A stretch of DNA of 63,758 bases, filler included, from Octopus bimaculoides (GCF_001194135.2; 5 parts of 5 records of this genome joined end to end with filler, not necessarily neighbours in it), one strand, 5' to 3'. Shown: positions 5,503 through 29,524, numbered from the whole stretch's first letter. Numbers and translations: made by a program. The notes: generated from the sequence alone by a model not told the origin.

Positions 5503-5673
5503 CACATATATACATATATATGTGTGTGTATGTATGTTATATATATGTTATATATGCGTAATGTAAATATGTATATACGAATGTGATAAGTATGTGTGTA
5601 TAAGTGTGCATATGTATATGTAAGTGTGCGTATGTGTGTGTAAGTGTTAGGTAGGAAGACAGATTGAATGGTT

Positions 5674-5957
5674 TTATTTTGAAAGAATCTGAACAACAAT
5701 TGTCAGTATTAGCAATAGAAAGAGAAATGGCGTTGAACTTTTGGTGGCAGACGAAGGGAGAACAGAACAATGAGCGTTATAATTAGTGTGTTTTCTTGTA
5801 CAGGAAGAATATCCCATGGCCACTGCAAGGTAGTTTTGCTCTTTGACTCCGGTAATCAGATGAGACATCGGTCCTCGGGCATAAGCAACAACATCCTTGC
5901 CACCATGAGTTTCAGCTGCCAAAGGAACGGCACTTTGTTGTAGGTAATTTTTCAAAG
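5674..5957 (-). CDS. ALPL-like: Alkaline phosphatase terminal coding exon, copy A (C-terminal catalytic segment plus GPI-anchor-type tail)
   Basis: Translation (x)LKNYLQQSAVPLAAETHGGKDVVAYARGPMSHLITGVKEQNYLAVAMGYSSC...PFLFLLLILTIVVQILSK* matches the ALP C-terminal signature QSAVPLxxETHGGEDVxxxAxGPMAHLxxGVHEQNY. A pyrimidine-rich acceptor (tttttctctttaatcttctag|CT) gives a phase-1 start at 5957, as for the last exon of vertebrate ALPL. Hydrophobic C-terminus. Confidence 0.92.
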
Positions 5958-6806
5958 CTAGAAGATTAAAGAGAAAAAGAAAAACGAAAATTAATTAATG
6001 AATAAAAACATATAAATTATTTAACACGCATGTATACACCCACACACATACATACATACATACATACATACATACGTACATACATACATACATACACATA
6101 TTTATATATACTTATAATTTGTTTGTTGAAAGAATTAATCTTAATAGATCTAAAAACAATGCTAGACCAAGCATAATATAAATTTGTTTAAGAAAAAACT
6201 TGATTGTGCCACTGGATACATAGAAGTTGGTTAGCTCATTTCCATCTTTTCTTGTTTTATTTATTAAGGAAGGACCTTAGAGGGGATTTTTGGTCTCCTA
6301 CAGTAGGTATACGCTGGGGGATTTGGCTGGACGGTGAATGTCAATTTTCACTCATGATTGCAAGTCGACATGCTACTCGAAATGCTTTAGCACTTTTCAA
6401 GTCACCACATAATGTCTGATACTATATGTCCACGCTAATTGATATATCTCATCGTGGCGGATAGGCTATGTGTCAAAGGATCAACGTCTTTATTGCATAT
6501 TGTAGCCTCATAGCAATAAATAAAGAATTTTGAATGTCTTAATCTCAATATCCCAGAATGTATCAGGCAAATAATATACCTAAATGGACTCGTTTGCTAC
6601 TTTCAGAAATCATTTAATCTATATATATATAAACTTGGAAATATTCGCTGCGACTTTGCGTTGATGAAATGTTTCAAATTTTAATTTCTCAACGTAAACT
6701 TCTTAACAGCAAGAGGGAGAGAGGGTTATCCTGTATGCACGCCAACAAATATGTGTTTAAAAATTACAGTTAAATTAAAAGTTACTAAAATTATAAATTG
6801 ATATAA

Positions 6807-6845
<39 letters not shown>

Positions 6846-7355
6846 NNNNNNNNNNNNNNNNNNNNNNNNNNNNNNNNNNNNNNNNNNNNNNNNNNNNNNN
6901 NNNNNNNNNNNNNNNNNNNNNNNNNNNNNNNNNNNNNNNNNNNNNNNNNNNNNNNNNNNNNNNNNNNNNNNNNNNNNNNNNNNNNNNNNNNNNNNNNNNN
7001 NNNNNNNNNNNNNNNNNNNNNNNNNNNNNNNNNNNNNNNNNNNNNNNNNNNNNNNNNNNNNNNNNNNNNNNNNNNNNNNNNNNNNNNNNNNNNNNNNNNN
7101 NNNNNNNNNNNNNNNNNNNNNNNNNNNNNNNNNNNNNNNNNNNNNNNNNNNNNNNNNNNNNNNNNNNNNNNNNNNAAACATTAGAAATAACAGTGAAAAA
7201 CATTAAAACATGCGCGAGCAAATTAAATATTTAAAAGCTACGAGCAAACGAATTGCAGTTGCTAAAAGTAACAGTCAAAACAACGCTTGAAATATTTATT
7301 AGTTAACAAATCTTTATAGCGTTCTCAAATGGAATTTTTACTGTTATGAAAACAA

Positions 7356-7465
7356 TTATGGAACACGTGGTGGTTACACTCCATGTGCGTATGTGCAGCA
7401 TCTTTAGTTACTATGGAAACATAGTTCTTTGTTAACAGTTATGGAACACATGCTGGTTACACTCC
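7356..7465 (+). repeat. 27-bp direct repeat pair flanking an X-box-like motif
   Basis: ttatggaacacgtggtggttacactcc (7356-7382) vs ttatggaacacatgctggttacactcc (7439-7465). Confidence 0.85.
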
Positions 7466-8439
7466 TTGGGGATCTAGTTAGTTTTATTCCCAAAATCTGC
7501 ATTTTTTAAAAGGAAGTAAAAAAATCTGAAAATCGGTTATATTAATGCAGTTTTCCACGCTTATTCCTGAGAAACTATGAACTTGTGGAGAAAAAAAATT
7601 GACGAAAAAGGTACAGACGTTCAAAAATCAAAAACACTGTATTTTTAGCCAATAATGACAGAAATTTTCTGCGCTGTAGCGTTGTCAACTTTAAGGTTGT
7701 ACCTTGTGAAATGACCTGTTCATTGTAGGTTTTAAATAAACAGAAATACCTAATAGTGTCAACATGTATCATCTTACAGTTTCTTTTGTCTCTTCATTGA
7801 TTTCTATAGTGTTTTGTATGTTTTTATTAATTTTTTAAAAATTTGCTATATTGATATATATTTGTATGTATGTGTTTGTTTCACATTAGTTTTTACAGCT
7901 GTACTTTATGAAGCCGTTGATTTCTACGCACAGGAATCAATATGAGTTGCGTATTTCAGTATTATGTATACTTGTCATGTATATGTGTACATCCTTAATA
8001 TATATGTGCATGTAGATGTATGTATTCATATATAAGTTTATATGTACATTTACGCATTCATATATGTGTGTGTGTGTGTGAAAAATGGGCGTCTGTCTCC
8101 AAAACTCCAACGCTGAGTAATGTTCTCATGTTTGGATTTGTGAACAACGATAAAAATAATCAATGTATTACCTCACGGAAAAGGAAAAGTGGGGTGGGCA
8201 GGTTTCCTTGATTTTGTTTTTAATAATTTTTTTTTTGTTTCATACAATGGAAAATTTCCTCAAAATTTCTCTCTTTCACATCCCACCCCTTAATTATGTG
8301 CCCTTTTTTCCTTCCGTGTCATTTAGGAAATAACTATTCTGATTCATTCTGCTAGCTTCAGCTCCACAGGGTTTATTATTTCTACCTCAGCTGGACCCAA
8401 ACCTACCAATTACATTACTTGCCCACCACACGTATATCT

Positions 8440-9342
8440 TTACCTCCACATCTCAAGAAGGGGTGGAGGAGGAGCACACGACCGGGTGATTAATAAGTTC
8501 ACATCATAATCCTGACATGTTAGTGTTGAGTTCAATCCAACTCCATCACACCTTGAACAAGAATCTTTTAGCCTAGTTTTAGTTTGATCTTTTTTTTTAA
8601 TCTTCAACCCAATTTGGGTTTGAAAGAAGGGACAGTGCCCACACCCTTTATGGACATCTAGATGAGTGAGGTTAATGGTTAATGCCATTGGTGTTCCTTG
8701 TAAACTTTCGTAAACCAATATCTGTTGGAAAGATATGAGCAGGGTGGGATTTCCTGAGGGAAGGCATTTTGAGGGGGAAAAATTGAGCATAGTGATAAAT
8801 GTGAGGCCTTGTAGGAGTGGACATAAGAGGGATGATGAGAAGAAAAGAGGCAAGTGGGATGGGACCGCTTGAGAGGAGGTGACGTGAGCTCAGTTAGNNN
8901 NNNNNNNNNNNNNNNNNNNNNNNNNNNNNNNNNNNNNNGTGCCCACACCCTTTATGGACATCTAGATGAGTGAGGTTAATGGTTAATGCCATTGGTGTTC
9001 CTTGTAAACTTTCGTAAACCAATATCTGTTGGAAAGATATGAGCAGGGTGGGATTTCCTGAGGGAAGGCATTTTGAGGGGGAAAAATTGAGCATAGTGAT
9101 AAATGTGAGGCCTTGTAGGAGTGGACATAAGAGGGATGATGAGAAGAAAAGAGGCAAGTGGGATGGGACCGCTTGAGAGGAGGTGACGTGAGCTCAGTTA
9201 GCTGCAAGGAGCAGAAGCCATATAGTACAGTAGAAATGGCAGAAAGAGAGGACACAGAATGTCTGTGCATCAGAGGATGGAGCACGTCTGTGCATCAGAG
9301 GATGGAGCACGTCTGTGCATCAGAGGATGGAGCACGTCTGTG
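8440..9342 (-). mobile_element. Decayed non-LTR (CR1/L2-group-like) RT C-terminus and 3' flank; partly duplicated across an assembly gap
   Basis: PLMHRHSVSSLSAISTVLYGFCSLQLTELTSPP...HP..V...PQNAFP resembles the LxHRRxVSSLxxFYxxxxGxCSxEL RT C-terminal block; degenerate. Confidence 0.55.
9261..9342 (+). repeat. 25-bp tandem repeat, 3 copies plus a partial
   Basis: (gtctgtgcatcagaggatggagcac)x3 + gtctgtg, no spacers. Confidence 0.95.
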
Positions 9343-9889
9343 GGTGACTTAATAGTTAATCTGTCAAGTGGCCAAAGCATTGGGAGCGAAATTGGTTAAA
9401 TAGAAACTGTATAGAATCCTGCCAAATGAAGTACAACTAATTTAAAGAGCCAACCTAGTCTCACATCAAATATGTAACCAATAAGGGGGTGGGGTGGATG
9501 AAGAAACCTGTGATCCACAGCGACCCACAGTTCCCTGTCAATAGAATTATTCATCTGATATTTAGTTTAATTTTGTTTTGATGTTCCACAATTTATTCAT
9601 CGAATGGTGTATTTTTCTTAATAGTTGAGAAACATTCAGTTGAAACATTCAGTTGAAACTCTGGCTATGTCCATCATGTGTCACACTGATTCTGTCCCAG
9701 AATTGCATTAAGGCCACATATATCTATGGAATACTCAGCCAAATTACATTATTAGATCCTGGACCTGTAATTAAAAGGCCTAACCATATCACACTGGGTT
9801 GTACTGATTCTACTTATAGATTGTTGTGGGTACATGTGTGTTGTGGTATACCCAGCCAGTTATATATTAATATAATGTGTAACCAAGAC

Positions 9890-10094
9890 GTCGAGCTGGC
9901 AGAAGCGTTAGCATGCCGGGCAACATGCTTAGCGGTATTTCTTCTGTCTTTCGTTCTGAGTTCAAATTCCGCCGAGGTCGACTTTGACATTTATCGGGGT
10001 CGATAAATTAAGTACCAGTTGCGTACTGGGGTCGATATAATCGACTGGCCTCTCCCCAGAAATTTCGGGCCTTGTGCCTTGAGTAGAAAAGAAT
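9890..10094 (+). mobile_element. tRNA-derived SINE, family A
   Basis: A-box-like TGGCAGAAGCG, B-box GAGTTCAAATTCC, body ggtcgacttt...ggggtcgataaattaagtaccagtt...ctggggtcgat; about ten copies in the window. Confidence 0.85.
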
Positions 10095-10116
10095 ATGTGT
10101 AACCATAAGACTACCA

Positions 10117-10230
10117 GCTGACAGAATCATTAACACACTGGGCAAAATGCTTTACATTTTGGGTTCAAATTCCACCTAGGTTGACTTCAACTTTCATTTT
10201 TTGAGGGTTGATAAAATAAGTACTAGTTGA
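10117..10230 (+). mobile_element. SINE family A, degenerate partial copy
   Basis: gctgacagaatcattaacacactgggcaaaatgc...ggttcaaattcc...gataaaataagtactagtt. Confidence 0.65.
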
Positions 10231-11399
10231 ATGTGTAACCAGTTCGGTTGATCATACAACTGGAATGATCATCTTAGAAACAGATGAAGATCCATTTCCT
10301 TTAGTTTTTGTTTACTTATACACATCAGCAAATGAGCCAATGAGGTAATCTCTGTGTGGTTCTTCAATTTGCTAGAAATAACAGCCAAATCTCCCTCACA
10401 CTATGCTCTAACATTTTAAAAATGAAGGACACATTAAATAATGTTCTACATCTTCATTGAAAATACAGAATGGCTCATTCTGGCCTGGCCTGGGTTTAAA
10501 CTGACAGGCATTCGTTGCAATCATTGCGAGTGTGCTGCCAGTACAAATTCCCACGAACAACTTTTTTACGCATGTTGTGCCTAGATTTACTGCGCCTTTT
10601 TTTTTTTTTTTGTAGGGATAACACTCTTTTCTTGCAAATAATTTACTGCATCCATCTCTATTTTCAAAATCTCCTTCAGAGTAGTACAATTAAATGGCTT
10701 GAATGTGGATGCGGCCATTCAAAGCAACAGTAAAAACAGAAAAACATAGGAAAACTTCACGAAATATATATAAAATATATATATGAAAACTATATGAAAA
10801 ATAAATAAAATATTAAGGCAATTGGCGAGAAATATGTACAATAAAATTCTAAATGATAAATACAAATTTTTCAGAAAGTTATTTAAAAAAACCCAAAAGA
10901 GTGATATGCACAAACAAAACGTGCGAGTGAAGCAAGGTGCGTGTGAAGTGAATCCCATAGTGTGAAGAATCAACACAACGTGCGGTTGTCATGGTAACTA
11001 GCTGTTAATGCCTCGCTGTCTGCTGATTGGCTAAAATTACCCAAATTTTCCCAACTTTAATTCCAAATAACATCAGATTCTTTAATTTACGAGATAAAAT
11101 AATTAATTGAGCGTAATCAAAATTCAGAACTGCGTCGATACGCCACCATGGATATGTGTCTATTATGTATGGATGTCTCCATATGTGTCCTTGTGTGTTT
11201 GTGTGGAGTATGCGTGTGTATATGTGTGTGTTTGTCCATATTACTTATGTACCTATCTATCTACTCAGCTATCTATTTGCCTGCATTTCCATTTACCTAC
11301 CTACCTATATATATATATATATATATTCGCTTACATAACAGCCTACTAACAAATCTACCTATGTATGTATAAACTGTGGGTATTTGAGTATCACTACCT

Positions 11400-11690
11400 T
11401 CTATGTGTAACTCCTATTTAGTACAGAAGATGTTTCGTTTATGAGGACGTACTCCTGTATTTCTCTAAGTATTGGACCCTTCGGGTGCTTGGATAAAATG
11501 TGGATGTCAAGTGTGCCTCCATGTTAGACTTCGGTATGTTGGTAGAGTATAGAGGACTGTTTTCTTGTTATAATGTCTCAAATGTCTATTTAATCTCTCC
11601 GCAATGCTTCTAGATGTCTCACCAATGTAAATCATGTTCTTGTCGTTACAAGAACCCTCTATGCACCTTATATTGTAGACTACATTTCTA
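11400..11690 (-). mobile_element. Penelope-like GIY-YIG endonuclease fragment (different subfamily)
   Basis: NVVYNIRCIEGSCNDKNMIYIGETSRSIAERLNRH, then after a frameshift LDIHILSKHPKGPILREIQEYVLINETSSVLNR; abuts a (TA)n tract. Confidence 0.8.
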
Positions 11691-11769
11691 TATGCATATA
11701 TATGTATATATATATCATGGGCTCTCCTGTCGTTAGACGACGTATGAGGCTTCGGCAATCTCTTGCCGA

Positions 11770-11990
11770 ACAATCACATAGATGATTTGTGTATAGCGAT
11801 CAAATTCCCTCCATCAAAACGACATTACTTGTATAGGTGCCCCGTATACTACATGTCAAATGACAAAAATGATCGCAGAGCAACGTGAAATGAAGTGTTT
11901 TGCTCAAGAACACAACGCAACGCCTGGTGTGGGAATCGAACCCATGAACTTGCAATTGTGAATGCAATACCCTAAACACAAAGCCACACA
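11770..11990 (-). mobile_element. tRNA-derived SINE, family C
   Basis: Minus strand tgtggctttgtgtttagggt...gggttcgattccc...gcgttgtgttcttgagcaaaacacttcatttcac; related copy at 15260-15500 (+). Confidence 0.7.
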
Positions 11991-12536
11991 TATATTCTCC
12001 GAAACGGATGCGTCGCGTTCAATTAAATAATAAATACTATATATATATATACATGCATATATGGGCACAGGACGTCACCAACGGTGCAAATAATATGAAA
12101 TACGTAAACACGAGAAAAAAATGGAAAACAGGACAAGTTAACACAGAGAAATGACCTTTCATCAGTTGTCGGCTGTCGATCTACTTCTCATTTCGAGCAT
12201 TCAACGACAGTATGCTCCAATAAATTCGAGCATTCAACGACAGTTGCTCCCATAAATTCTAAAATGAAATTTAGGATTTATGAAGGGTCAAAGTTGAGAA
12301 CAAAAAAATTATAGTGGACACATACAAGGAAACCGAACGGAAATGAACTTGGTGGGTCGTTAGACCAGAACGAGAGGAAAATAGTGAACGCTGGGAGAAA
12401 CATTTTTTGAAAAGAGAAAAGATAGGAGAGATGTATGTATGTATATAAAGATGTGTGTGTGTATGTGTGTGTGTATATATATACTTATACATGTATATAT
12501 ATTATAATGTATACATATATAAACATACACATGCAC

Positions 12537-12569
<33 letters not shown>

Positions 12570-13668
12570 NNNNNNNNNNNNNNNNNNNNNNNNNNNNNNN
12601 NNNNNNNNNNNNNNNNNNNNNNNNNNNNNNNNNNNNNNNNNNNNNNNNNNNNNNNNNNNNNNNNNNNNNNNNNNNNNNNNNNNNNNNNNNNNNNNNNNNN
12701 NNNNNNNNNNNNNNNNNNNNNNNNNNNNNNNNNNNNNNNNNNNNNNNNNNNNNNNNNNNNNNNNNNNNNNNNNNNNNNNNNNNNNNNNNNNNNNNNNNNN
12801 NNNNNNNNNNNNNNNNNNNNNNNNNNNNNNNNNNNNNNNNNNNNNNNNNNNNNNNNNNNNNNNNNNNNNNNNNNNNNNNNNNNNNNNNNNNNNNNNNNNN
12901 NNNNNNNNNNNNNNNNNNNNNNNNNNNNNNNNNNNNNNNNNNNNNNNNNNNNNNNNNNNNNNNNNNNNNNNNNNNNNNNNNNNNNNNNNNNNNNNNNNNN
13001 NNNNNNNNNNNNNNNNNNNNNNNNNNNNNNNNNNNNNNNNNNNNNNNNNNNNNNNNNNNNNNNNNNNNNNNNNNNNNNNNNNNNNNNNNNNNNNNNNNNN
13101 NNNNNNNNNNNNNNNNNNNNNNNNNNNNNNNNNTATATATATATATATATATATTATATAATATATAAGATACAAAAAAACAAAGGGTAGCAGGTCTGGT
13201 ATTACACGTCCAACAACTATTTCTAAGGGTCTGGGGTTACGTAATAATGTTGGCAGATGCAGTTCGCATAAAGTCAAGATTATGCAACCAGTGGTAGATG
13301 CATACAAGCATTAGGTAAATCCGGCCTCCGTCTTCATGATGGAGAGGTTGTTTTTCTGTGTCTTTTTACTCTGTGTAAATCTGCTCAATTTACGTATAAA
13401 TATCTACATATTTATACACGAATATTTATCGTCTGAATATCCTCAGTCTTTGTCTCCCTCTATTTATATGTATATGTGTATGTCTATATTATATATCTGG
13501 CCTAAGCGGTTTCATTTGTTTATTTGCATCATTCTCTCTCACTTTCTCGTTTTTTCTCTCTTCCTTTCTCCTTTTGGTGAAGAATTAGGGTCTCTCTGTG
13601 TCTGTCCTACGTGTACGTTTTGTAGTATTTAATGCATTTACATGTGTGTGTGTGTGTATATATATATT

Positions 13669-14001
13669 CTTTTACTCTTTTACTTGTTTCAGTCATTTTA
13701 CTGCGGCCATGCTGGAGCACCGCCTTTAGTCAAGCAAATCGACCCCAGGACTTATTCTTTGGAAGCCTAGTACTTATTTTATCGGTCTCTTTTGCCGAAC
13801 CGCTAAGTTATGGGGACGTAAACACACCAGCATCGGTTGTCAAGCGATACACATATACGACGGGCTTCTTTCAGTTTCCGTCTACCAAATCCACTCACAA
13901 GGCTTTGGTCGGCCCGAGGCTATAGTAGAAGACACTTGCCCAAGGTGTCATGTAGTGGGACTGAACCCAGAACCATGTGGTTGGTAAGCAAACTACTTAC
14001 C
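13669..14001 (-). mobile_element. tRNA-derived SINE, family B (CORE-like central block, internal microsatellite)
   Basis: Minus strand head ggttcagtccc...ccttgggcaagtgtcttctactatagcc...; tail ggtgctccagcatggccgcagt.aaatgactgaaacaagtaaaagag; truncated by a gap. Confidence 0.85.
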
Positions 14002-14880
14002 NNNNNNNNNNNNNNNNNNNNNNNNNNNNNNNNNNNNNNNNNNNNNNNNNNNNNNNNNNNNNNNNNNNNNNNNNNNNNNNNNNNNNNNNNNNNNNNNNNN
14101 NNNNNNNNNNNNNNNNNNNNNNNNNNNNNNNNNNNNNNNNNNNNNNNNNNNNNNNNNNNNNNNNNNNNNNNNNNNNNNNNNNNNNNNNNNNNNNNNNNNN
14201 NNNNNNNNNNNNNNNNNNNNNNNNNNNNNNNNNNNNNNNNNNNNNNNNNNNNNNNNNNNNNNNNNNNNNNNNNNNNNNNNNNNNNNNNNNNNNNNNNNNN
14301 NNNNNNNNNNNNNNNNNNNNNNNNNNNNNNNNNNNNNNNNNNNNNNNNNNNNNNNNNNNNNNNNNNNNNNNNNNNNNNNNNNNNNNNNNNNNNNNNNNNN
14401 NNNNNNNNNNNNNNNNNNNNNNNNNNNNNNNNNNNNNNNNNNNNNNNNNNNNNNNNNNNNNNNNNNNNNNNNNNNNNNNNNNNNNNNNNNNNNNNNNNNN
14501 NNNNNNNNNNNNNNNNNNNNNNNNNNNNNNNNNNNNNNNNNNNNNNNNNNNNNNNNNNNNNNNNNNNNNNNNNNNNNNNNNNNNNNNNNNNNNNNNNNNN
14601 NNNNNNNNNNNNNNNNNNNNNNNNNNNNNNNNNNNNNNNNNNNNNNNNNNNNNNNNNNNNNNNNNNNNNNNNNNNNNNNNNNNNNNNNNNNNNNNNNNNN
14701 NNNNNNNNNNNNNNNNNNNNNNNNNNNNNNNNNNNNNNNNNNNNNNNNNNNNNNNNNNNNNNNNNNNNNNNNNNNNNNNNNNNNNNNNNNNNNNNNNNNN
14801 NNNNNNNNNNNNNNNNNNNNNNNNNNNNNNNNNNNNNNNNNNNNNNNNNNNNNNNNNNNNNNNNNNNNNNNNNNNNNNNN

Positions 14881-15102
14881 ATATATATATATATATACAT
14901 ATATATACATATATACATACATGCATACATACATACATACATACATACATACACACATACACACACATATATATGAAAAATAGAGAGATAAATAAATAGA
15001 TATGTATATGTATGCATGCACACACATATAAATACATGTGTGTGTATGTGTGTGTATGTGTGTGTATGTGTGTGTGTTTGTGTGTGTGTGTGTATGTGTG
15101 TG

Positions 15103-15137
<35 letters not shown>

Positions 15138-15223
15138 ATGTGTGTGTATGTGTGTTTGTGTGTGTGTGTGTGTATGTGTGTGTATGTGTGTGTGTGTTTG
15201 TGTGTGTGTCTCTGTGTGTGTGT

Positions 15224-15258
<35 letters not shown>
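14881..15258. repeat. Compound (TA)/(TACA)/(TG) microsatellite, representative of dozens in the window
   Basis: Direct inspection; other large tracts at 27060-27185 (GAGACA-type), 31786-31854 (ATT), 35337-35400 (AAT), 43527-43820 (GAA/CTA/TAA), 44455-44550 (GA), 46518-46617 (TG). Confidence 0.95.
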
Positions 15259-15259
<1 letters not shown>

Positions 15260-15260
<1 letters not shown>

Positions 15261-15500
15261 GGCACATAGCTTAGTCATTAGGGTGTTGCACTCATGATCG
15301 CAAGGTCATGATTTCGATTGCTAGACAGGTTGATGCGTTGTGTTTTGGGGCAAAGCACTTCATCTCAGGTTGATCTGCGTTCACTTCGACACCTGACGCG
15401 TGGTATACAGTTGACCTGTTCAGAGAACGTCGATTTGATGGTGAGAGTGAGCTAATGTACAGCATGGACATTTGATCACTATAAACAAATCAGTTGTTCA
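15260..15500 (+). mobile_element. SINE family C, diverged
   Basis: gcttagtcattagggtgttgcactcatgatcgcaagg...gcgttgtgttttggggcaaagcacttcatctc...atttgatcactataaacaaatca. Confidence 0.65.
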
Positions 15501-16819
15501 GGTCTTCGATAGGTATCCATCATATATATAACATAACTAGTTCGAGAACTCTTTGGTTCCACCTTGTATATANNNNNNNNNNNNNNNNNNNNNNNNNNNN
15601 NNNNNNNNNNNNNNNNNNNNNNNNNNNNNNNNNNNNNNNNNNNNNNNNNNNNNNNNNNNNNNNNNNNNNNNNNNNNNNNNNNNNNNNNNNNNNNNNNNNN
15701 NNNNNNNNNNNNNNNNNNNNNNNNNNNNNNNNNNNNNNNNNNNNNNNNNNNNNNNNNNNNNNNNNNNNNNNNNNNNNNNNNNNNNNNNNNNNNNNNNNNN
15801 NNNNNNNNNNNNNNNNNNNNNNNNNNNNNNNNNNNNNNNNNNNNNNNNNNNNNNNNNNNNNNNNNNNNNNNNNNNNNNNNNNNNNNNNNNNNNNNNNNNN
15901 NNNNNNNNNNNNNNNNNNNNNNNNNNNNNNNNNNNNNNNNNNNNNNNNNNNNNNNNNNNNNNNNNNNNNNNNNNNNNNNNNNNNNNNNNNNNNNNNNNNN
16001 NNNNNNNNNNNNNNNNNNNNNNNNNNNNNNNNNNNNNNNNNNNNNNNNNNNNNNNNNNNNNNNNNNNNNNNNNNNNNNNNNNNNNNNNNNNNNNNNNNNN
16101 NNNNNNNNNNNNNNNNNNNNNNNNNNNNNNNNNNNNNNNNNNNNNNNNNNNNNNNNNNNNNNNNNNNNNNNNNNNNNNNNNNNNNNNNNNNNNNNNNNNN
16201 NNNNNNNNNNNNNNNNNNNNNNNNNNNNNNNNNNNNNNNNNNNNNNNNNNNNNNNNNNNNNNNNNNNNNNNNNNNNNNNNNNNNNNNNNNNNNNNNNNNN
16301 NNNNNNNNNNNNNNNNNNNNNNNNNNNNNNNNNNNNNNNNNNNNNNNNNNNNNNNNNNNNNNNNNNNNNNNNNNNNNNNATATATATATATATATATATA
16401 CATATATATACATACGTACGTACTTACGTATGTATGTATGTATGTATGTATGCATGTCGGTGTTGTTAATCGTAGATCAGCCTATCTTTCCTCTTTCATG
16501 TTGGAAAGGTCAGCGTTTATCACTGCCGCTGACCTCCATCCCAATCAGGACATTTTGTGTTAAGTCTTAACTCTGGAATGCAATAGAATGAAGTGACACA
16601 AGAAATTCCTCCGAATTACGTCACATGTCTGGCTTCAAAGACATCTTGACTTCCTGAAGATTGTCTTGCCACAATGAATAGCTGAGAAACTAATCAATCA
16701 TGTTGACATTTCTGAAAGTTTCTCCAATTCTGTGTAATACGCGCTTATGTGTGTGTATGTGTGTTTATACATTTACATACACACACAATCACACACACAA
16801 GTCTACATACATACATACA

Positions 16820-16851
<32 letters not shown>

Positions 16852-16921
16852 CTCAGTATAAAGAAATAAGATTAAATTTCCAACAAGTAGATACCAGTAA
16901 ATGTATGTAGAATACAAATCC

Positions 16922-16974
16922 CAGGTAAATCCTCACGTATGACAGGTAAATCCTCACGTATGACAGGTAAATCC
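16922..16974 (+). repeat. 21-bp tandem repeat, 2.5 copies
   Basis: (caggtaaatcctcacgtatga)x2 + caggtaaatcc. Confidence 0.95.
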
Positions 16975-17279
16975 AATAACTCTTATGCAGAATTTTAAGA
17001 AAATCAGAGTATTAACAACAATCAATGATATGTACAAAGAAAATATCGTTACTTTAGATCACACCTTAAAAATCCAACAATTGTTTCAATTGCATTAAAA
17101 TATACAAACACACACATATATATATATATTCATACACACACACGCATACATACACACACGCACGCACACACACACACACGCATACACACACACACACATG
17201 CGTAATATCAAAATTAATATGCACTAAAATTTATGTCAACACAACATTATCAAGGTAATCTAAATTAGTGTTTAAAGAA

Positions 17280-17625
17280 GAATATAATATATAAGTGTTG
17301 GTATATTGATTCTTCTGCTACTAGCTGGGAATCTAGATTTTATAATCATTCTAATTCCTTTTAAATACAGAAGAAAATGTAATTCTACTAATCTTAGTAA
17401 ATACATTTGGAATTTAAAGGATAAGAATATTAAATATGACTTAAAGCAGTCCATTATTACTTATGCACCATCGTATAATACTGGTAATTCTATTTGTGAT
17501 CTTTTCCTCGAAGAATTATATTTGATAATTATTTTAAAATTAATTTTATTAAATTTTAATGGGCACTTAACTTTAAGATGATGCCATAAATTCAGAAAGA
17601 CATTCAAATATTTCAATTATTAATT
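17280..17625 (+). mobile_element. Penelope-like GIY-YIG endonuclease remnant
   Basis: NIIYKC-WYIDSSATSWESRFYNHSNSF, then STNLSKYIWNLKDKNIKYDLKQSIITYAPSYNTGNSICDLFLEELYLI...LLN, typical of the PLE endonuclease C-terminus; frameshifted. Confidence 0.82.
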
Positions 17626-19348
17626 ATAACAATATTTTAATTAATTGTTATATAATAAGGTTAATTTCTATTAAAGTGCTTAATATAACGAGTAATTAGT
17701 TATAGCGATGTAAAGTATCCGAGCTTGGATTAAGTATAACGTAAAATTCTTATCTATAATTTTTATTCTTTAATTATCCACCGAGAGCATCAAGAACTGT
17801 ATATATTATTAATCATAGTAAGTTTTCAATTATTATATAATAATCTTAATTCATATAAAAGGGTAAAATACAAATAAACAGGTATTTAATTATCTTATCC
17901 GTTATTTTTACTTTTTAGTTATCTAGCGTTGTCATCAATAATTGTATATATTATTATTGATTATAATAATTTTTAATCATTATATAATAAGGTTGATTCC
18001 TGTGTAAGAGTTTATCATAATGAATAAATAGATATTTGGTTGCCTTTTTTGTAATTTTTATTTTTAAATTATCCAGTGAGATCCTCGGTGGTTGTAAATG
18101 TTGAATATAATAATTCTTCAGTTATTATAAAATAAGGCTAATTCCTATAGAAGGTTAATTCCTATTGAATAAATAAATAATTAATTATTGCGATGTAAAG
18201 TATATATTTTTATTGAGCATTACGTGGAATTATCATCTGTACTTTTTATTCTTTAATTATCTATTAAGCATAACGTAGAATTCTTGTCTGCAGATTTTGT
18301 TCTTTAGATATCCAATGACGTCATCAATTTTAGTAGATAAATATACTCGTTTTCTATGTTAGGTTTTTTAATGTAGATTTCAAATTGTCAAAAAATTTGG
18401 AATTAGTATGATACTTTTTATATTTTATTTTTATAAACTAAATTAGTTATTCAATGACGTCGCTCTTAGTTGAATGAATGAATGAATGTCTAAAGTTAAA
18501 TTTGGTTTGGCGTTTCTTTTTGTTAGCGTTTTTTAAAAGGTAAAATTTTTTCAGATATTCACTAACTATTTCACCAATTTGGATTACTTTCATAACATGT
18601 TACGTTGACATAAATTTTCGTACATATTATTAATTTTAATAATATCATGTATATGTGTATGAGTGTGTGTGTGTGTGTATGAATATATNNNNNNNNNNNN
18701 NNNNNNNNNNNNTATAATGCAAGAGAGTTAGGGGTTGAGGATTCAACCCACTAAGGGATGGTATCTATCCAATATATTGCTGGGAGGGTACCCAATTATT
18801 GTTACACTAGTGTTATACCAAGTGTAATAAGTGGGTGCGGGTAAAAGGGGGGTTATTTTACCCTAAATTTATATAGCAATAAGAAAATGGAGGAGAATAT
18901 GCGGTATCCATCGACTTGCAGACAGTGTATTCCATTGAATTTATTTATTTATTTTGTAACTAAAATGACAAAAACCACAATATACAGATGCTTATGACAT
19001 ACCATGTCATATTAACAATTAAGGTTACAAATATAAAGTACATTTAGCAATTGGAGAATATACAGAAACTTACAGAGGTTTCTGCCTAGCTTTGGCATGC
19101 CCATTCTATCCCTATAGCTCCTGCGTGCCGGAGTAATTAGCATAAACTCCAGTCACTCCTTATGTCCCACCCGATGTCACTACACCCACCCTCTACCACT
19201 CTCTCTCCACGATCCATTCCCCCTCATCCTCACCCACACCCTTCTAGTACTCCAACTCCCTATGTATTTACTTCTTCTCTCTCTCCTCCCAGCCTTCCAC
19301 TTCCTCTACCACCCCTCCTACATCTAACTCATCCACCCCTCTCCATTT

Positions 19349-19630
19349 CAGTCTATTGTTACCATTCCTCCTGATCTTCCCCTCTCTGACGCGGAGCGCT
19401 CTCTTCTCAGTAAGGGTCTGCGCTTCATCCCCCTCACTCCATCCAATAATGGATTTCAGACCCGTGCTGATATTCATAGTTTTGTGTGCTGCGTCAGGCT
19501 ATATGCACTATTCCACAACACTCCACCTGCATCTAATGAAGACGACTGCTTCACCGATCAGGGCCGCCGACCATTCCACTGGACGCCAGCTCCCGGCCAG
19601 TTCCAAGCAGTTGATTATTTTGCAAGTTGA
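19349..19630 (+). mobile_element. Penelope-like element N-terminal (pre-RT) region, truncated
   Basis: Open frame QSIVTIPPDLPLSDAERSLLSKGLRFIPLTP...RADIHSFVCCVRLYALF...HWTPAPGQFQAVDYFAS with the PLE LSKGLxFxP motif; ends at a short direct duplication gttgattattttgcaa/gttgatcattttgcaa. Confidence 0.78.
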
Positions 19631-19779
19631 TCATTTTGCAAAGTGATTCCTCAGATGAAAAGATAAAAAAATATTTTCAAAGAACACCCAAGAAAGATAT
19701 ACCTCATAATTGGTGAGCCAATTCCTATAACTGACAGAAGTGGAGAAACTGTTCAAATCTATAGACTTGGAGGATATCA

Positions 19780-20600
19780 TTGCCCTATATTCCTCCGGGA
19801 TCGATAAAATAATATACCAATCATGTACTGGGATCGAAGCTATCGGCTAACTCAAAATTGCTGCCCTTGTGGCCAAGATTAGAAATCCTGGATCGTTTCT
19901 GTTTGGCTGCCACTTTTCAATTTCTTCAACTTTTGCTCCAATTGATTTCATATTTGGTGTATTTGCGTAGTTTTGTAAAATAACCGTTGGCATGAAATTC
20001 ATTTTTGCCATAAATTGATAAATAAAGTATTAATAGCTTTTAAAGTTTGCAAATTTAGGGTAATTGTAGCCAATCGAAAGCCACAGACATATAGGTGCCT
20101 GTTTCCATAGTAACAAACCAAGCTGTTACCAAGCTGGTTGCCCATGTGTTCTTTTTATCGCTTATTAAATGCTTGAAACGCATGAGGTATGAGATGTGCT
20201 AAACATAACAGCCAAATAGACCTTAAATTATACGCGAAATTGTTTTTTTGCATAATCGTATGATTTTCCCGTGTGTAGAAAACAAATTCGCAAAAAATTT
20301 TTGAAAATTCCAAAAAATAAGAATCGTATGAGTGGTTATATGGCGTGCGTAAATCAGAATTCCACCAATATTTCATTTGTTTACAGTTGACAACATGTGC
20401 TGTCACGCACAAAATGACAGCTTCCAAATCCTGTTTTCTGATTGGATAAAAATTATGAAACTTTAAACCTTTGTAATTTTTTTCTGGAAAAAGTGAATTC
20501 ACCGCTGAAATTCAAGCGTAGAAATTACATCAATACACCAAATTTTATAATTTTCAACAAACTTTAAAATTTCTACGGGTGCAGCCAAAGAGAAAGGATC
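19780..20600. repeat. Dispersed repeat, probably DNA-transposon-derived; related pieces at ~10960-11160 (opposite strand) and ~51225-51290
   Basis: aaatttagggtaattgtagccaatc (20051-20075) is the reverse complement of gattggctaaaattacccaaattt (11025-11048) apart from a substitution and a 1-nt indel; tattcctc(c)gggatcgat...ctggatcgtttct recurs at 51228-51277. Confidence 0.5.
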
Positions 20601-20632
20601 CGAAATCCTTATTAGATATTATTCCTGCAATG

Positions 20633-21050
20633 TGGTGAGCTGGCACAATTGTTAGCACGCCGGGCAAAATGCTTCTTCATGTTCTGCGGTCAAATTCCGC
20701 TGAGGTCGACTTTTTCTTTCATCTTTTCGGGGTCGCCAAAATAACTGTCAGTTGAACACTGGGGTCGACGTAATCGACTTACCCTCCCCCAAAATTGCTG
20801 GCCTTGTACCAAAATTTAAAACCAATATTATTATTATTAATAATAAGGCGAGATGGCAGAATCGTTAGCACGCTGGGCAAAATGCTTTGCGGCATTTCGT
20901 CTGCTTTTACGCTCTTAGTTCAAATGTCGTTGCAATCGATTTTGCCCTTCATCTTTTCGATAATATATGTATCAGTTGAACACTGGGGTCGATGTAATTG
21001 ACTTACCCTTGCCCCGAAATTTCAGGTCTTGTACCATTAATAGAAACGAT
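20633..21050 (+). mobile_element. Two tandem SINE family A copies
   Basis: Copies at ~20633-20825 and ~20845-21050 separated by an (ATT)n tail. Confidence 0.8.
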
Positions 21051-21204
21051 TGATATTTCTATAATCGTTATTGTTTGTTGTAGCTATTTTTATGATAATG
21101 TTTATTACTGAGATTTTTTAAAGAAAAGAGAGAGAATAGTACACACCAAAATATTTCCTTCTGTTTGTTGCCACCAATCTTCAACAACAAAAATGTCCAG
21201 TCTA

Positions 21205-21470
21205 TCACCACAAAAACGAAATTAAAAGGATGGTAGAAACGATGAAAGTTCTTTTGTTTATTGTTATCATAGGTGTATTTGATGTTGAACAGTGATTCTT
21301 GTTTGAACCAATGCACGATGAGTAAGCCAAGGCAATTGGCACAAACACTTGCTCCCTTACACCGTGAAATATATGAGACATAGGACCACGAACAAAAATC
21401 GCAATTTCCTCAGCTCCATGCGTTTCACGGGAGAGAGGAACTGTAGCTTGTTGTCGATAAGATTTATCAG
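21205..21470 (-). CDS. ALPL-like: Alkaline phosphatase terminal coding exon, copy B (not in the ORF track because it has no Met start)
   Basis: Translation (x)DKSYRQQATVPLSRETHGAEEIAIFVRGPMSHIFHGVREQVFVPIALAYSSCIGSNKNHCSTSNTPMITINKRTFIVSTILLISFLW*. Acceptor atttttgtcttttcttag|CT, phase 1. AATAAA on - at 21101-21106, about 100 nt after the stop. Hydrophobic GPI-type tail. Confidence 0.92.
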
Positions 21471-21880
21471 CTAAGAAAAGACAAAAATATGATAAATAAA
21501 TAAGTAGAAATGTATAACGAAAAGGAAATCCGAAGGAAGAAAAAGAAAAAAGAAGGGAAATTATCGAAATATGTCTTTATGTTGCTTTCTTTTGAATTGT
21601 CATTGTCAGAAAACATTTCCACATTTTAATTTTCTTATTTTTCAAACACATAATGCAATGTGAAGAAGAACATAGGTGTGGTCAGTTATAGCGTTGTCAC
21701 GGTTAAATCCAAAAACGGGGGTAAAGTGAGATGGCAGGTAAGTTAATAAAATAATGAAGTTAATTAGTTAAATTAGATTGGTGTTTAGTTAGTAGTCATG
21801 CAGATTAGTAGTTGAGTAGAATGAACACATTGCTAGCGAGGTACCAAAAAAGCTAAATCTCAAGAGCAGGTGTGTGTGTG

Positions 21881-21929
<49 letters not shown>

Positions 21930-21995
21930 NNNNNNNNNNNNNNNNNNNNNNNNNNNNNNNNNNNNNNNNNNNNNNNNNNNNNNNNNNNNNNNNNN

Positions 21996-22038
<43 letters not shown>

Positions 22039-22599
22039 CTTCCCGCTGATCAAGGATAAAAAATGTTCCGGCCATGCCTACCAAGACTTTCTTTCAGATG
22101 TAGTGTATCTTGGACAACATCATATAACGTGTCTTTCATTTTTTAAGATTGTAGAGTTTAGATATGAAAGTGGTTTGACTGCTATCTCTAGCAGCCCGGT
22201 TGTTTTTCCTGTAATAGCTTCAGATAACAGCTAATGAACGGTGGCACGTACGTTGATTACTGACTGGAAATCGGATAACTCCATACCCGTGGCTTGCTGG
22301 CAAACACTGAGTACTGTATCTGAGTGGTTCATATTTGAAAATATACTAAATATATTCCTCTATTTCAGTGGTACAGAAGCTTATTTCTTTTGTTGTTAAA
22401 TCTCTACAACAACACAATATCTCCCAATGCATTTGTACGCGCAAAAACACTCGCAGCACACACTTACACATACATACAAACACACACCAAGGCATACGGA
22501 CATAATTGCTCACGTCACGGAAAGAGTTAAGTTAACCAGATTGGTGTCACAGAACAAGGGTACAGGAGGAGGGATCTGTATGAGCACCCCCTACTTACA

Positions 22600-23460
22600 A
22601 AGGGGATAGAAGATGCTCTGCGGTCAGTTTGTGTGAAGCTTGAGGGATTCGGTTGATAAAAGAGGTTATAAATCAAATTATAAAAATAAATAAAATGATA
22701 ATAATAATAATGATACAATCTATAAAAAGAAGTAATAAGCATAATATTAACTATAAAAACAATAATATAAGTACAAATATTAATAATACAAATATGAATA
22801 CTAATAATTATAATAACAACAACAAACATAAAAGAGAAAACAATAAAAATATAAAGATAGCTAAGGAAAACAAAGACAAAGTGGATAGTAACGAAAATAG
22901 TAAACAACCTAACGTAAATAATTTTAAATTAATGGCAGACTCTAAACAGAAAATAAATATAATGAGGATAACTCTGAAAGCATAGAATACAAGCACAGCT
23001 CTATTAGTAAGGAAACAGAGAAAGCTTCTAAAAATAAAACTTTCGATTGCGCCAAAGGAAAATGATGTCCATTAAATTCTTTCTGTAGGGAAAATGGTGT
23101 AATATATGGGTGTAAGTTAGTATCTGAGGGACAGGATTACTACTATATAGGTTCAACGGAAAATTATATAAAAAGAATAACTAATCATAAAAACACTTTT
23201 AGGGATAGGAAAAAAGAGGTTAGCACTAATCTTAGTAAACTAATTTGGACGATTAAAGATAAAAATAAGGACTATATGCTTAAGTGGGAAATAACGAGCC
23301 GAGCAAAATCTTATAGCATTGGAAGCAAAAGATGTGAATTTTGCGTCGAGGAAATTTACCAGATTTTTTACATCAAAACACAAATTAATCAACAAGAGGG
23401 AAAGAGGACCCTGTTGTGTTCATAAAGTTATATACACATTCAATAAATTTAAATAGATAT
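22600..23460 (+). mobile_element. Penelope-like element 3' part with Asn-rich insert and complete GIY-YIG domain
   Basis: 23066-23425 is open: CPLNSFCRENGVIYGCKLVSEGQDYYYIGSTENYIKRITNHKNTFRDRKKEVSTNLSKLIWTIKDKNKDYMLKWEITSRAKSYSIGSKRCEFCVEEIYQI. It is preceded by the Asn-rich ORF 22653-22985. Confidence 0.85.
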
Positions 23461-24079
23461 CATTAAATAAGCACTGTGTAAATAATACATAATAATACTT
23501 AAGAATAGTTCATAAAGTTAAATATATTTTCAATAAATTAAATAGATTTGGTTAAAATAAACACCGTGTATATAACACCCATGAATTGCGCATCTTTACT
23601 ATAAATTAAATAGACAACTATATATGAACCCAAACTATCAACTAATATATCTGAATAAATAATTATATTTAACGGTAACTAATATAAATTTTCCAAAAAG
23701 AAAAGTAAATAATAGTGTCGATATAAAATAGATAAATAAAAGTAACAGTTGGGTACATACTTAGATTTATTTTATCAATAATAAGAGCATAGAGGAATAT
23801 GTTATGGATATGCTGGCTTAAGTTTGGCCAAAAGGGAGGAATAAGGACAAAGAGAAATGTGTTATGGACATACTGAACAGAGTGAAAGGTAGTGGCTAGC
23901 TTGTAAACGGTTAATCGCCACTACCATAAGAGTGAATAGCAACATGACCTACTTCTTCTGAACTATGTCCACACATACACACATATATATACAGATATAT
24001 ATATACAGATATATATATACAAATATATATATATAAATGTATATATATATGTATATATATATGTATATATATATATATG

Positions 24080-24124
<45 letters not shown>

Positions 24125-28547: not shown

Positions 28548-29524
28548 TCTCATACGAAATTCTGCAACTGGTAATGATGGCTCTGAATTCTGTAGAAAAT
28601 CTTTAGAGGTAAAATTTAAAGGGAGTACGTCGCATTCTAACACAAAGGTGAGACACAGTTTTAACTTGTATATATTTAATATACTTGGAAGTGTTTTAGG
28701 ATTTCCGATCAAGATACTGTATCCTTGCTAGCAGTTAAAATATATGTGCACGGGTGTGTGTAAGAAGAACAAAATTTGATCATGATTTTGGTGGCAAGGA
28801 CTGGGTTGCGCAAATCATTTTGGGTATAAACAAGGACATCATCATCAGTTTAAGCATTATACACAAACGTTACAAGGAGACGTAGGTTAATAATATCATG
28901 GAAAAATTGCACCAAGAGAAACAAGACCTAACCACTGAATTGATTCAATATTCCACGATTTATGTAAGAGCTTCTGTGTAGACACGGAACCTAAAAGACA
29001 TAGCAGTTGCATTTCTATTCAGACCTCACATATCTATCTTAATATGCCGGGATTTATACAACGAAAGCAATATTCATTGGCATGAAATTACATGGCTGCA
29101 GTAACAAGAACTCCAAATTCTGCTAAGATTAAAAAAAAACGGTTTTCAGTTTCCAATTTAAAATTAACATATTATGTCAGCTTTTGAAACAGTATATCTT
29201 GTTAGCAGTATCATTGAAGCATCTAATCTCAAAGTCTCAAATTCTGAGAGTGACCACAAATCTGTTTTAATAGTTTAAAAGGTCAGCATGCGCATGTAAC
29301 CAAAATTGTAAGAGAGAAATTAGTTTACAAATCGCACCCAGAAAAACAAACACTACATTTTATAAACAATAGAAAATAAAATAATATGTAAATAAGTTTC
29401 GCAGTCACATATTTTCACCGATCAATGAAAGGTCTTTTACAAATGAATAATTGTTAGTTATTCTTGAAAATGTTTCCGGTATCCCAAGAAAAGATATCTC
29501 TATAAGAATTGTGTAAATTAAAAT

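What the first reader, a model, noticed from the sequence alone, without database searches (positions are those of the whole stretch)
5674..21470. Two intact, ~50%-identical alkaline phosphatase last exons with no recognisable gene body between them: candidate mutually exclusive C-terminal cassettes that swap part of the active site
Seen: two minus-strand exons (5674-5957, 21205-21470) start at the same phase-1 acceptor position, stay open to a stop, and share 26 of 52 aligned residues from the exon start to YSSC. Each ends in a different hydrophobic GPI-type signal. I found none of the ~10 upstream ALP exons (GDGMG, DSAGT, HATP, GGGR, GRIDH, DHSH, NGPG motifs) in the sequenced part of 5958-21204, and the five small gaps there are unlikely to hide them all. 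Known: this exon supplies the Zn-ligand His of ETHG (E. coli His412, PLAP His432, TNAP His437) and the residue three positions before it (PLAP Glu429, GCAP Gly429, TNAP His434), a determinant of specificity and amino-acid inhibition. Here that residue is Ala in copy A (PLAAETH) and Arg in copy B (PLSRETH); the following motif also differs (GGKDV vs GAEEI). Inference: one shared gene body could splice to either exon, giving isoenzymes with different catalytic pockets and anchors by alternative terminal-exon choice rather than whole-gene duplication.
Basis: partly seen in the sequence, partly recalled or inferred. Interest (0 to 1): 0.85.

Follow-up and report, generated by a model that had tools for sequence, protein, structure and literature searches.

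The report
Octopus alkaline phosphatase: two alternative last exons
An octopus alkaline phosphatase gene carries two diverged but intact copies of its last coding exon one after the other behind a single gene body, so it probably makes two membrane-anchored enzyme variants by choosing one ending or the other, although no transcript has been examined yet.

Summary
Observation confirmed. Minus-strand exons A (5674-5957) and B (21205-21470) are both alkaline phosphatase (ALP) last exons (Pfam E 6e-11 and 3e-10). They share 26 of 52 residues in the catalytic part. Each keeps the Zn-ligand His, two Cys, a hydrophobic tail and a stop. No other ALP exon lies in the window.

The orthologous Octopus vulgaris locus is gapless and collinear with the window. 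It shows one gene body whose last common exon ends in a phase-1 donor. A B-like exon follows after 5 kb and an A-like exon 10.4 kb further on, with nothing ALP-like between them.

Between the two species, the catalytic part of both exons has dN/dS 0.10 (A) and 0.19 (B), with simulation P at most 0.0012 and 0.0074. Neither exon has a frameshift. Acceptors and AATAAA signals are conserved.

Hidden exons, a misjoin, a second gene and a dead pseudo-exon are therefore each unlikely. The best reading is tandem-duplicated alternative last exons that give two GPI-type isozymes.

No splice junction was seen. One deposited O. vulgaris CDS joins the body to A and skips B. Homologous C-terminal exon swaps are a well-known class; I found no ALP precedent. 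Three other mollusc ALP genes have a single last exon.

The parts
21205..21470 (-). Exon B, the proximal alternative last coding exon of the ALP gene. It has 87 codons plus a TGA stop at 21205-21207. It encodes the Zn-ligand His (SRETHGAEE), GPMSH, two Cys (C-x7-C) and a 14-residue hydrophobic C-terminus.
   Evidence: It is 87% identical in protein to L001 18351-18611. Core dN/dS is 0.19.
21471..21510 (-). 3' splice site of exon B. The tract is 78% pyrimidine and ends in TTAG. The exon starts with CT (phase 1).
   Evidence: The last 60 nt are nearly identical in O. vulgaris.
21101..21106 (-). AATAAA about 100 nt after the stop of exon B. It is the candidate poly(A) signal of the proximal terminal exon.
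   Evidence: It lies at the same place in O. vulgaris (L001 18720, +108 from the stop). This is a consensus match only.
5674..5957 (-). Exon A, the distal alternative last coding exon. It has 93 codons plus a TAA stop at 5674-5676. It encodes the Zn-ligand His (AAETHGGKD), GPMSH, two Cys (C-x10-C) and a hydrophobic C-terminus of about 16 residues.
   Evidence: It is 86% identical in protein to L001 29042-29317. Core dN/dS is 0.10. The deposited O. vulgaris CDS CAI9740640.1 joins it to the gene body.
5958..5995 (-). 3' splice site of exon A. The tract is 78% pyrimidine and ends in CTAG. The exon starts with CT (phase 1).
   Evidence: It is conserved in O. vulgaris.
5673..5678 (-). AATAAA overlapping the stop codon of exon A. 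It is a candidate poly(A) signal and would give a very short 3' UTR.
   Evidence: It is present in both species. This is a consensus match only. Another AATAAA lies at 5053.
5996..21100 (.). Spacer between the two terminal exons. For transcripts ending in A, it is part of the last intron, which runs on upstream through exon B. It holds microsatellites, SINE-like repeats, a ~147-nt tandem repeat, a GIY-YIG fragment and six assembly gaps. It has no ALP exon.
   Evidence: It is collinear with L001 18612-29039, which is gapless and also has no ALP exon.
21511..24124 (-). 3' part of the intron shared by both isoforms. By comparison with O. vulgaris, the penultimate (NGPGY) exon and its donor lie roughly 1.5 kb beyond the edge of the piece.
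   Evidence: Window 23095 aligns with L001 15819, and the donor is at L001 13306.

Best explanation
The window holds the 3' end of one octopus ALP gene of the TNAP/IAP type. Its last coding exon was duplicated in tandem long ago. Both copies are still coding and probably serve as alternative last exons.

Mechanism (inferred):
- The donor of the penultimate (NGPGY) exon carries one codon base.
- It splices either to the proximal acceptor (exon B), with cleavage at the AATAAA about 100 nt after the B stop, or it skips B and splices to the distal acceptor 15 kb downstream (exon A; 10.4 kb in O. vulgaris).
- Either junction makes a Thr codon (A+CT) and continues in frame.

The two products would share about 440 residues. 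They would differ in the last roughly 50 mature residues, which include the Zn1-ligand His, its neighbours at the mouth of the active site and the C-terminal disulfide loop. They would also differ in the cleavable hydrophobic signal of GPI type.

Shown here: the gene architecture, the phase compatibility, the absence of a second gene body, the conservation and purifying selection on both exons, and the consensus splice and poly(A) signals.

Inferred: that both junctions are actually made, that both tails direct GPI anchoring, and that the isozymes differ in kinetics.
For: 1. Both ORFs are ALP last exons with the metal-ligand His, GPMSH and both Cys.

2. No other ALP exon is in the window.

3. 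The O. vulgaris orthologous locus L001 (GCA_951406725.2, OX597838.1) has no N and is collinear with the window at 88-94% non-coding identity. Its ALP body exons lie at about 5982-6236, 7646-7744, 9923-10064, 12401-12594 and 13176-13306. The B-like exon follows at 18349-18614 and the A-like exon at 29040-29320. Nothing ALP-like lies between them.

4. The penultimate exon ends ACA A|GTATGT, which is phase 1. Both last exons begin with CT.

5. Window versus O. vulgaris, 52-codon core. Exon A has 10 synonymous and 4 non-synonymous changes, dN/dS 0.10, Fisher P 9e-5. Exon B has 6 and 4, dN/dS 0.19, P 0.012. I placed the observed number of substitutions at random. Doing so gave this few amino-acid changes and no stop with P <= 0.0012 for A and <= 0.0074 for B.

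6. The 400-nt B-upstream flank shows 5 gap events and the 600-nt downstream flanks show 7-10. The exons show none (B) or a single in-frame 3-nt one (A).

7. The acceptor tracts and an AATAAA after each stop are conserved in both species.

8. The deposited O. vulgaris CDS CAI9740640.1 joins the body exons to the A-like exon and skips B.

9. Both tails have a cluster of small residues, a polar spacer and a 14-17 residue hydrophobic end, as in TNAP.

10. Homologous C-terminal exon substitutions are a recognised and enriched class: 77 of 236 human events (PMC9741552).
Against: - No RNA evidence was reachable. Neither junction has been seen by me.
- The one annotated model is unreliable. The gene is split into two models. 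The 195-aa model starts at an internal ATG. It leaves exon A at a cryptic donor that is GC in the window. It ends in an antisense hAT fragment. It may be ab initio, or derived from protein alignment, because the annotation pipeline mixed evidence types (PMC10700109).
- Exon nucleotide identity (90-92%) is no higher than that of the flanking introns.
- The selection signal rests on 10-14 substitutions per core and on two species only.
- The tails evolve at about the neutral rate (dN/dS 0.6-0.75).
- The poly(A) signals are bare consensus hexamers.
Confidence: 0.6

Rival explanations
1. Only one of the two exons is used. The other is a leftover of a partial duplication, or of a tandem paralogue that lost its body, and is no longer spliced into any mRNA.
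For: There are no transcript data. The only annotated CDS uses A and never B. Exon nucleotide identity equals intron identity. The tails evolve near neutrally. The B signal is the weaker one: whole-exon P is 0.013-0.04.
Against: - Both cores show far fewer amino-acid changes than expected by chance (P <= 0.0012 and <= 0.0074).
- Both ORFs are open in two species. The reference paper puts the O. bimaculoides split from O. vulgaris at about 34 My. That the window species is O. bimaculoides is my inference.
- A versus B synonymous divergence is saturated (dS 1.4-2.2). A copy that died soon after the duplication would not still be an intact ORF with all key residues.
- The exons have no frameshift indels, although the flanks have many.
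- Acceptors and AATAAA are conserved.
Confidence: 0.25
2. There are two separate tandem ALP genes. Copy A has its own upstream exons, hidden in the assembly gaps or in badly assembled sequence.
For: 2645 N lie between the exons, and gap sizes are only estimates. About 6 kb of the window (7176-13669) has no counterpart in O. vulgaris.
Against: - The gapless O. vulgaris interval (10.4 kb) has no ALP hit at E <= 1 with 119 queries.
- The readable window sequence has none either.
- The gaps are flanked by microsatellites. The O. vulgaris interval between the exons is likewise full of long microsatellite arrays.
- The window-specific sequence looks like a transposable element (GIY-YIG fragment).
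Confidence: 0.03
3. Assembly artefact: a scaffold misjoin or a collapsed or duplicated haplotype brought two unrelated ALP 3' ends together.
For: The assembly is gap-rich. At least one local artefact exists, the perfect 263-nt duplicate around gap 8898-8938.
Against: An independent long-read, Hi-C curated assembly of another species has the same order, strand and neighbours (PMC10700109). The two exons are only about 55% identical in DNA, far too different to be haplotypes.
Confidence: 0.02
4. Exon A is used, but by a different transcription unit that starts between B and A (for example from a transposon promoter) rather than by the ALP gene body.
For: The spacer is full of transposon fragments. 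The O. vulgaris model continues from A into a hAT-derived exon.
Against: A 50-residue ALP fragment cannot fold or bind Zn alone, so the ALP-type constraint seen on its core would be unexplained. The acceptor phase matches the ALP donor. No ORF with a signal peptide or other partner exon was found in the spacer.
Confidence: 0.05

Closest known systems
Tandem-duplicated exon substitutions at the C-terminus (homologous alternative 3' exons). Examples are tropomyosin TPM1 / Tm1 / lev-11 and Drosophila pip. From my own knowledge, KRAS 4A/4B and CDC42 also belong here.
   Same: Two homologous exons lie in tandem and share one upstream donor. Each carries its own stop. The products are identical except for a homologous C-terminal segment that also carries the membrane-attachment signal. 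The class is well documented: 77 of 236 human events are C-terminal (PMC9741552). Clusters of terminal exons are also described (PMC9013439).
   Different: The gene family is ALP, for which I found no report of this arrangement. The swapped part includes a catalytic metal ligand and residues at the mouth of the active site, not only a tail. Expression of both forms is not shown.
ALP isozymes made by whole-gene duplication: human ALPL, ALPI, ALPP and ALPG, and Bombyx membrane-bound and soluble ALP (my own knowledge).
   Same: Isozymes differ at the residue three before the Zn-ligand His (TNAP His434, PLAP Glu429, GCAP Gly429) and in their GPI signals. Those are the same positions at which A and B differ.
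   Different: Here only the last exon is duplicated and the rest of the enzyme would be shared. The test for a second gene body was negative.
Acetylcholinesterase H and T forms, which use alternative 3' exons to give GPI-anchored or tailed enzyme (my own knowledge).
   Same: An ecto-enzyme changes its C-terminal anchoring signal through the choice of 3' exon.
   Different: The AChE exons are not homologous to each other and do not contribute to the catalytic domain. Here both endings look like GPI signals.

Membership tests
Alkaline phosphatase (Pfam PF00245), C-terminal exon | Significant match to the family profile | tested here: met
   A scores 42.3 bits and B 40.2 bits against a cut-off of 24.4, over profile positions 373-422 of 423. 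PDB TNAP, IAP and PLAP hits reach E as low as 5e-20.
Alkaline phosphatase (Pfam PF00245), C-terminal exon | Zn1-ligand His in the E-T-H-G motif, followed by G-P-x-x-H | tested here: met
   A has AAETHGG...RGPMSH and B has SRETHGA...RGPMSH, in both species.
Alkaline phosphatase (Pfam PF00245), C-terminal exon | C-terminal Cys pair (the TNAP C472-C480 disulfide) | tested here: met
   Both exons have two Cys. The spacing is x7 in B, as in TNAP, and x10 in A.
Alkaline phosphatase (Pfam PF00245), C-terminal exon | GPI attachment signal: small omega residues, a polar spacer and a hydrophobic end with no cytosolic tail | tested here: inconclusive
   A rule-of-thumb hydropathy check fits both tails and TNAP. 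No GPI predictor or experiment was available.
Alternative last exons derived from tandem exon duplication | Two homologous exons in tandem on the same strand, within one gene, with no gene body between them | tested here: met
   Window. Gapless O. vulgaris locus.
Alternative last exons derived from tandem exon duplication | Same splice phase, compatible with one shared upstream donor | tested here: met
   The donor in O. vulgaris is ACA A|GTATGT at L001 13306. Both exons start with CT after the AG. In the window itself the donor lies beyond the edge of the piece.
Alternative last exons derived from tandem exon duplication | Each exon has its own stop codon and polyadenylation signal | tested here: met
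   The stops are TGA and TAA. A conserved AATAAA lies 101-108 nt after the B stop, and another overlaps the A stop. These are consensus matches only; their use was not shown.
Alternative last exons derived from tandem exon duplication | Both copies maintained by purifying selection | tested here: met
   Core dN/dS is 0.10 (A) and 0.19 (B). Simulation gives P <= 0.0012 and <= 0.0074. This rests on two species only.
Alternative last exons derived from tandem exon duplication | Transcripts with each of the two junctions | not testable with these tools
   No RNA-seq or cDNA was reachable. One deposited CDS (CAI9740640.1) joins the body to A, but the basis of that model is unknown.
Separate tandem ALP paralogues (whole-gene duplicates) | Each last exon is preceded by its own set of ALP exons | tested here: not met
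   No ALP exon lies between B and A in either species.
Decayed pseudo-exon | Stops, frameshifts or neutral substitution pattern | tested here: not met
   Both ORFs are intact in two species. Indels are none or a single in-frame one. Non-synonymous changes in the cores are in deficit.

The most novel reading that the evidence does not exclude
Octopuses, and perhaps all coleoid cephalopods, make two alkaline phosphatase isozymes from one gene. They would do so by mutually exclusive use of two ancient, homologous last exons. The exons exchange the segment that carries the Zn1-ligand His. B has a rare Arg three residues before that His, and A has a unique Lys three residues after it. The GPI signal is exchanged as well. 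The outcome would match what vertebrates achieved by duplicating whole ALP genes, and the choice could be regulated by tissue.
Probability: 0.5. Interest if true: 0.55.

Novelty: new member of a known kind. Interest (0 to 1): 0.45.

Why it matters
If both endings are expressed, this would be the first alkaline phosphatase I can find in which isozyme diversity comes from the choice of terminal exon rather than from gene duplication. The swapped piece includes a catalytic metal ligand and the position known from human PLAP, GCAP and TNAP to set inhibitor specificity. That would provide a natural pair of enzymes identical except for about 50 residues. Such a pair is useful for dissecting how this segment and the GPI signal tune ALP. 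It would also add a clear case of homologous C-terminal exon substitution in a cephalopod. On the practical side, the current O. vulgaris annotation of this gene is broken and omits exon B.

Tried and rejected
- **Word-indexed protein search.** The 93-aa and 87-aa exon peptides returned nothing, although a 93%-identical protein exists in the collection. This is a sensitivity limit for short queries, not evidence of absence.
- **Exact look-ups.** The ATG-started sub-ORFs of A and B are not on record.
- **Profile searches.** The full profile search and the body+tail profile search found only one cephalopod protein, P0076. No third Octopus species and no squid or cuttlefish locus could be reached.
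- **Literature.** Three searches for ALP with alternative last exons or octopus ALP isoforms found nothing relevant.
- **Flank comparison.** A and B share no flank similarity beyond the coding part, so no recent segmental duplication is visible.
- **Paralogue clades.** I asked whether A and B belong to distinct mollusc paralogue clades. They do not visibly do so. Nearly all ALPs are closer to A than to B, so B is simply the more derived copy.
- **Antisense ALP-like ORF.** A weak match at 22244-22390 was considered as a relic of an inverted paralogue. It remains undecided.
- **RNA genes.** tRNA and Rfam scans of the window found nothing.
- **Structure prediction.** Not attempted, because the N-terminal half of the protein lies outside all reachable sequence.
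Full report
**1. The observation**

On the minus strand, 5674-5957 (A) and 21205-21470 (B) each follow a pyrimidine-rich tract and an AG. Each starts with CT and stays open in the same frame to a stop: TAA for A and TGA for B.

Both peptides match only the last 50 positions of Pfam Alk_phosphatase, above the gathering score. Both match solved TNAP, IAP and PLAP chains.

They share 26 of 52 residues from the exon start to YSSC. DNA similarity is 62-66% and confined to that coding part; the flanks share nothing.

Each exon keeps the ETH motif with the Zn1-ligand His, RGPMSH and two Cys. Each ends in a 14-17 residue hydrophobic stretch preceded by small residues and a polar spacer, the layout of the TNAP GPI signal.

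The identity of the ligand His and of the specificity residue three before it (TNAP His434, PLAP Glu429, GCAP Gly429) is established knowledge of the family. I did not test it here.

**2. Gaps and other exons**

It found the two last exons and nothing else convincing in 1-24124.

No gap touches either exon. The gaps are flanked by TG, TA and TACA microsatellites. The gap at 8898-8938 lies between two perfect 263-nt copies (8635-8897 and 8939-9201), so it is an unresolved overlap of contig ends.

**3. The orthologous locus**

A profile search of the representative library gave P0076 (195 aa). It is 93% identical to A over 45 residues and carries GGRIDHGHH, DHSH and NGPGY upstream of that stretch. 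It is CAI9740640.1, 'alkaline phosphatase 1 [Octopus vulgaris]'.

Its locus L001 (GCA_951406725.2, OX597838.1:13237625-13280139, reversed) has no N. The window is collinear with it, at 88-94% identity in unique non-coding blocks. This excludes a misjoin.

The window species is therefore a close relative of O. vulgaris but not O. vulgaris itself. The gap-rich assembly and the level of divergence fit O. bimaculoides, which split about 34 My ago according to PMC10700109. That assignment is my inference.

Gene order in L001:

| Feature | L001 coordinates |
|---|---|
| Body exon | ~5982-6236 |
| Body exon | 7646-7744 |
| Body exon | 9923-10064 |
| Body exon (GGRIDHGHH...DHSH) | 12401-12594 |
| Body exon (NGPGY) | 13176-13306 |
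| B-like last exon | 18349-18614 |
| A-like last exon | 29040-29320 |

The frames of the body exons join correctly. The penultimate exon ends ACA A|GTATGT, so one base is carried over. With the CT that opens either last exon, this makes ACT (Thr).

Between the B-like and A-like exons there is no ALP hit at E <= 1. That interval holds only microsatellite pseudo-ORFs, SINE-like copies and a LINE-like fragment.

The window ends about 1.5 kb short of the penultimate exon. That explains why no body exon is seen upstream of B.

**4. Are both exons alive?**

| Measure (window vs O. vulgaris) | Exon A | Exon B |
|---|---|---|
| Protein identity | 86% | 87% |
| DNA identity | 90% | 92% |
| Core synonymous / non-synonymous changes | 10 / 4 | 6 / 4 |
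| Core dN/dS | 0.10 | 0.19 |
| Fisher P | 9e-5 | 0.012 |
| Simulation P, core (kappa 1-4) | <= 0.0012 | <= 0.0074 |
| Simulation P, whole exon | <= 0.003 | <= 0.04 |

DNA identity in the exons is no higher than in the adjacent introns (92%). However, the changes are concentrated at synonymous sites of the 52-codon core. The simulation placed the observed number of substitutions at random and asked how often so few amino-acid changes and no stop would result.

The tails evolve at about the neutral rate (dN/dS 0.6-0.75) while keeping their hydrophobic character.

The 400-nt B-upstream flank shows 5 gap events and the 600-nt downstream flanks show 7-10. B has none and A has one in-frame 3-nt indel.

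A versus B synonymous divergence is saturated (dS 1.4-2.2). The duplication is therefore far older than the species split, and a copy that died early would not look like this.

The acceptor tracts are conserved. An AATAAA lies 101-108 nt after the B stop in both species, and another overlaps the A stop in both.

**5. What it most likely is**

The best reading is one gene with two homologous alternative last exons. Choosing the proximal exon requires cleavage at the B poly(A) site. Skipping it gives the distal exon A.

This step is inferred. I could not reach any RNA data.

The only annotation-level support is that the deposited O. vulgaris CDS joins the body to A and skips B. That model is poor for four reasons:
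- The gene is split into a 422-aa model that stops out of frame at L001 9993-9995 and a 195-aa model that starts at the next ATG.
- The 195-aa model leaves exon A at a cryptic GT, which is GC in the window.
- It ends in an antisense fragment of a hAT transposon.
- The pipeline mixed transcripts, protein alignments and ab initio predictions, so the basis of this model is unknown.

**6. Functional differences (inference)**

| Position relative to the ligand His | Exon B | Exon A | Among 247 ALP sequences |
|---|---|---|---|
| Three residues before | Arg in both species | Ala (window), Asp (O. vulgaris) | Arg in 1 of 247; Ser is usual; Ala and Asp are common |
| Residues directly after | GAEE | GGKD | GGED in 64%; GGKD only in the octopus A-type |

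The disulfide loop is C-x7-C in B and C-x10-C in A. The two forms could therefore differ in pocket electrostatics, inhibitor profile and anchoring efficiency.

In its core, A is closer than B to nearly all other ALPs. B is the more derived copy.

**7. Distribution**

The best-matching ALP genes of Patella vulgata, Pecten maximus and Gigantopelta aegis have the same exon boundary. Each has a single last exon, and none has a second copy within 10 kb downstream. The arrangement is not general in molluscs. Other cephalopods could not be reached.

**8. Comparison with what is known**

Homologous C-terminal exon substitutions from tandem exon duplication are a documented and enriched class. They account for 77 of 236 human events (PMC9741552), and clusters of terminal exons occur in Drosophila pip (PMC9013439).

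Three literature searches found no ALP example. Known ALP isozymes arise by whole-gene duplication.

I therefore rate this a new member of a known kind, pending RNA evidence.

**9. Verdict**

Confidence in the alternative-last-exon reading is 0.6. The main rival, that one exon is unused, is at 0.25. Interest is 0.45.

Noticed in passing
window 2142-3591 (+); L001 31739-33415: A decayed hAT-type transposase lies downstream of exon A. It has DUF4371 (E 3e-10) and the hAT dimerisation domain (E 2e-7), and is broken into several ORFs. It is 93% identical between the two species. Its antisense strand (window 3052-3108) supplies the last coding exon of the O. vulgaris model CAI9740640.1.
   Followed up: partly
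L001 9993-10001 and 29177; window 5820: The O. vulgaris annotation splits this ALP gene into a 422-aa model that stops out of frame and a 195-aa model that starts at the next ATG. It omits exon B. The cryptic donor it uses inside exon A is GT in O. vulgaris but GC in the window.
   Followed up: partly
window 8635-8897 and 8939-9201: A perfect 263-nt direct duplicate lies on either side of the 41-N gap at 8898-8938. This is an unresolved contig overlap, not a biological repeat.
   Followed up: yes
window 7176-13669, including 11507-11773 (-): About 6 kb of the window has no counterpart in O. vulgaris. It contains a GIY-YIG nuclease fragment (E 1e-5), possibly from a Penelope-like element. It is probably a lineage-specific transposon insertion.
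   Followed up: partly
window 9884-10046, 20634-20781, 20847-21005; L001 17406-17570, 18947-19111, 25968-26132, 28707-28877, 32219-32383: A SINE-like repeat of about 165 nt is present in many copies in both species, at 72-87% identity. It has no tRNA or Rfam match.
   Followed up: partly
window 17641-18355: A tandem repeat with a period of about 147 nt, 4-5 diverged copies, lies in the spacer between the two exons.
   Followed up: no
window 22244-22390 (+), antisense to the gene; L001 ~17589-17675 (-): A weak ALP-like ORF matches TNAP residues ~179-227 (DW-SDN--P ... FENI-NI), with best E 5e-5 among 119 queries. It is interrupted by a SINE in O. vulgaris. It is either a relic of an inverted ALP copy or a chance match.
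   Followed up: partly
window 5802-5957 versus L001 29042-29197: The synonymous differences in the core of exon A are almost all T in the window and C or G in O. vulgaris. dS is 0.33, whereas intron divergence is about 0.08. This suggests a local GC3 shift.
   Followed up: no
The word-indexed protein search reported no candidates for the 87-93 aa exon peptides, although P0076 shares long exact stretches with A. Negative results from that tool for short queries should not be trusted.
   Followed up: yes
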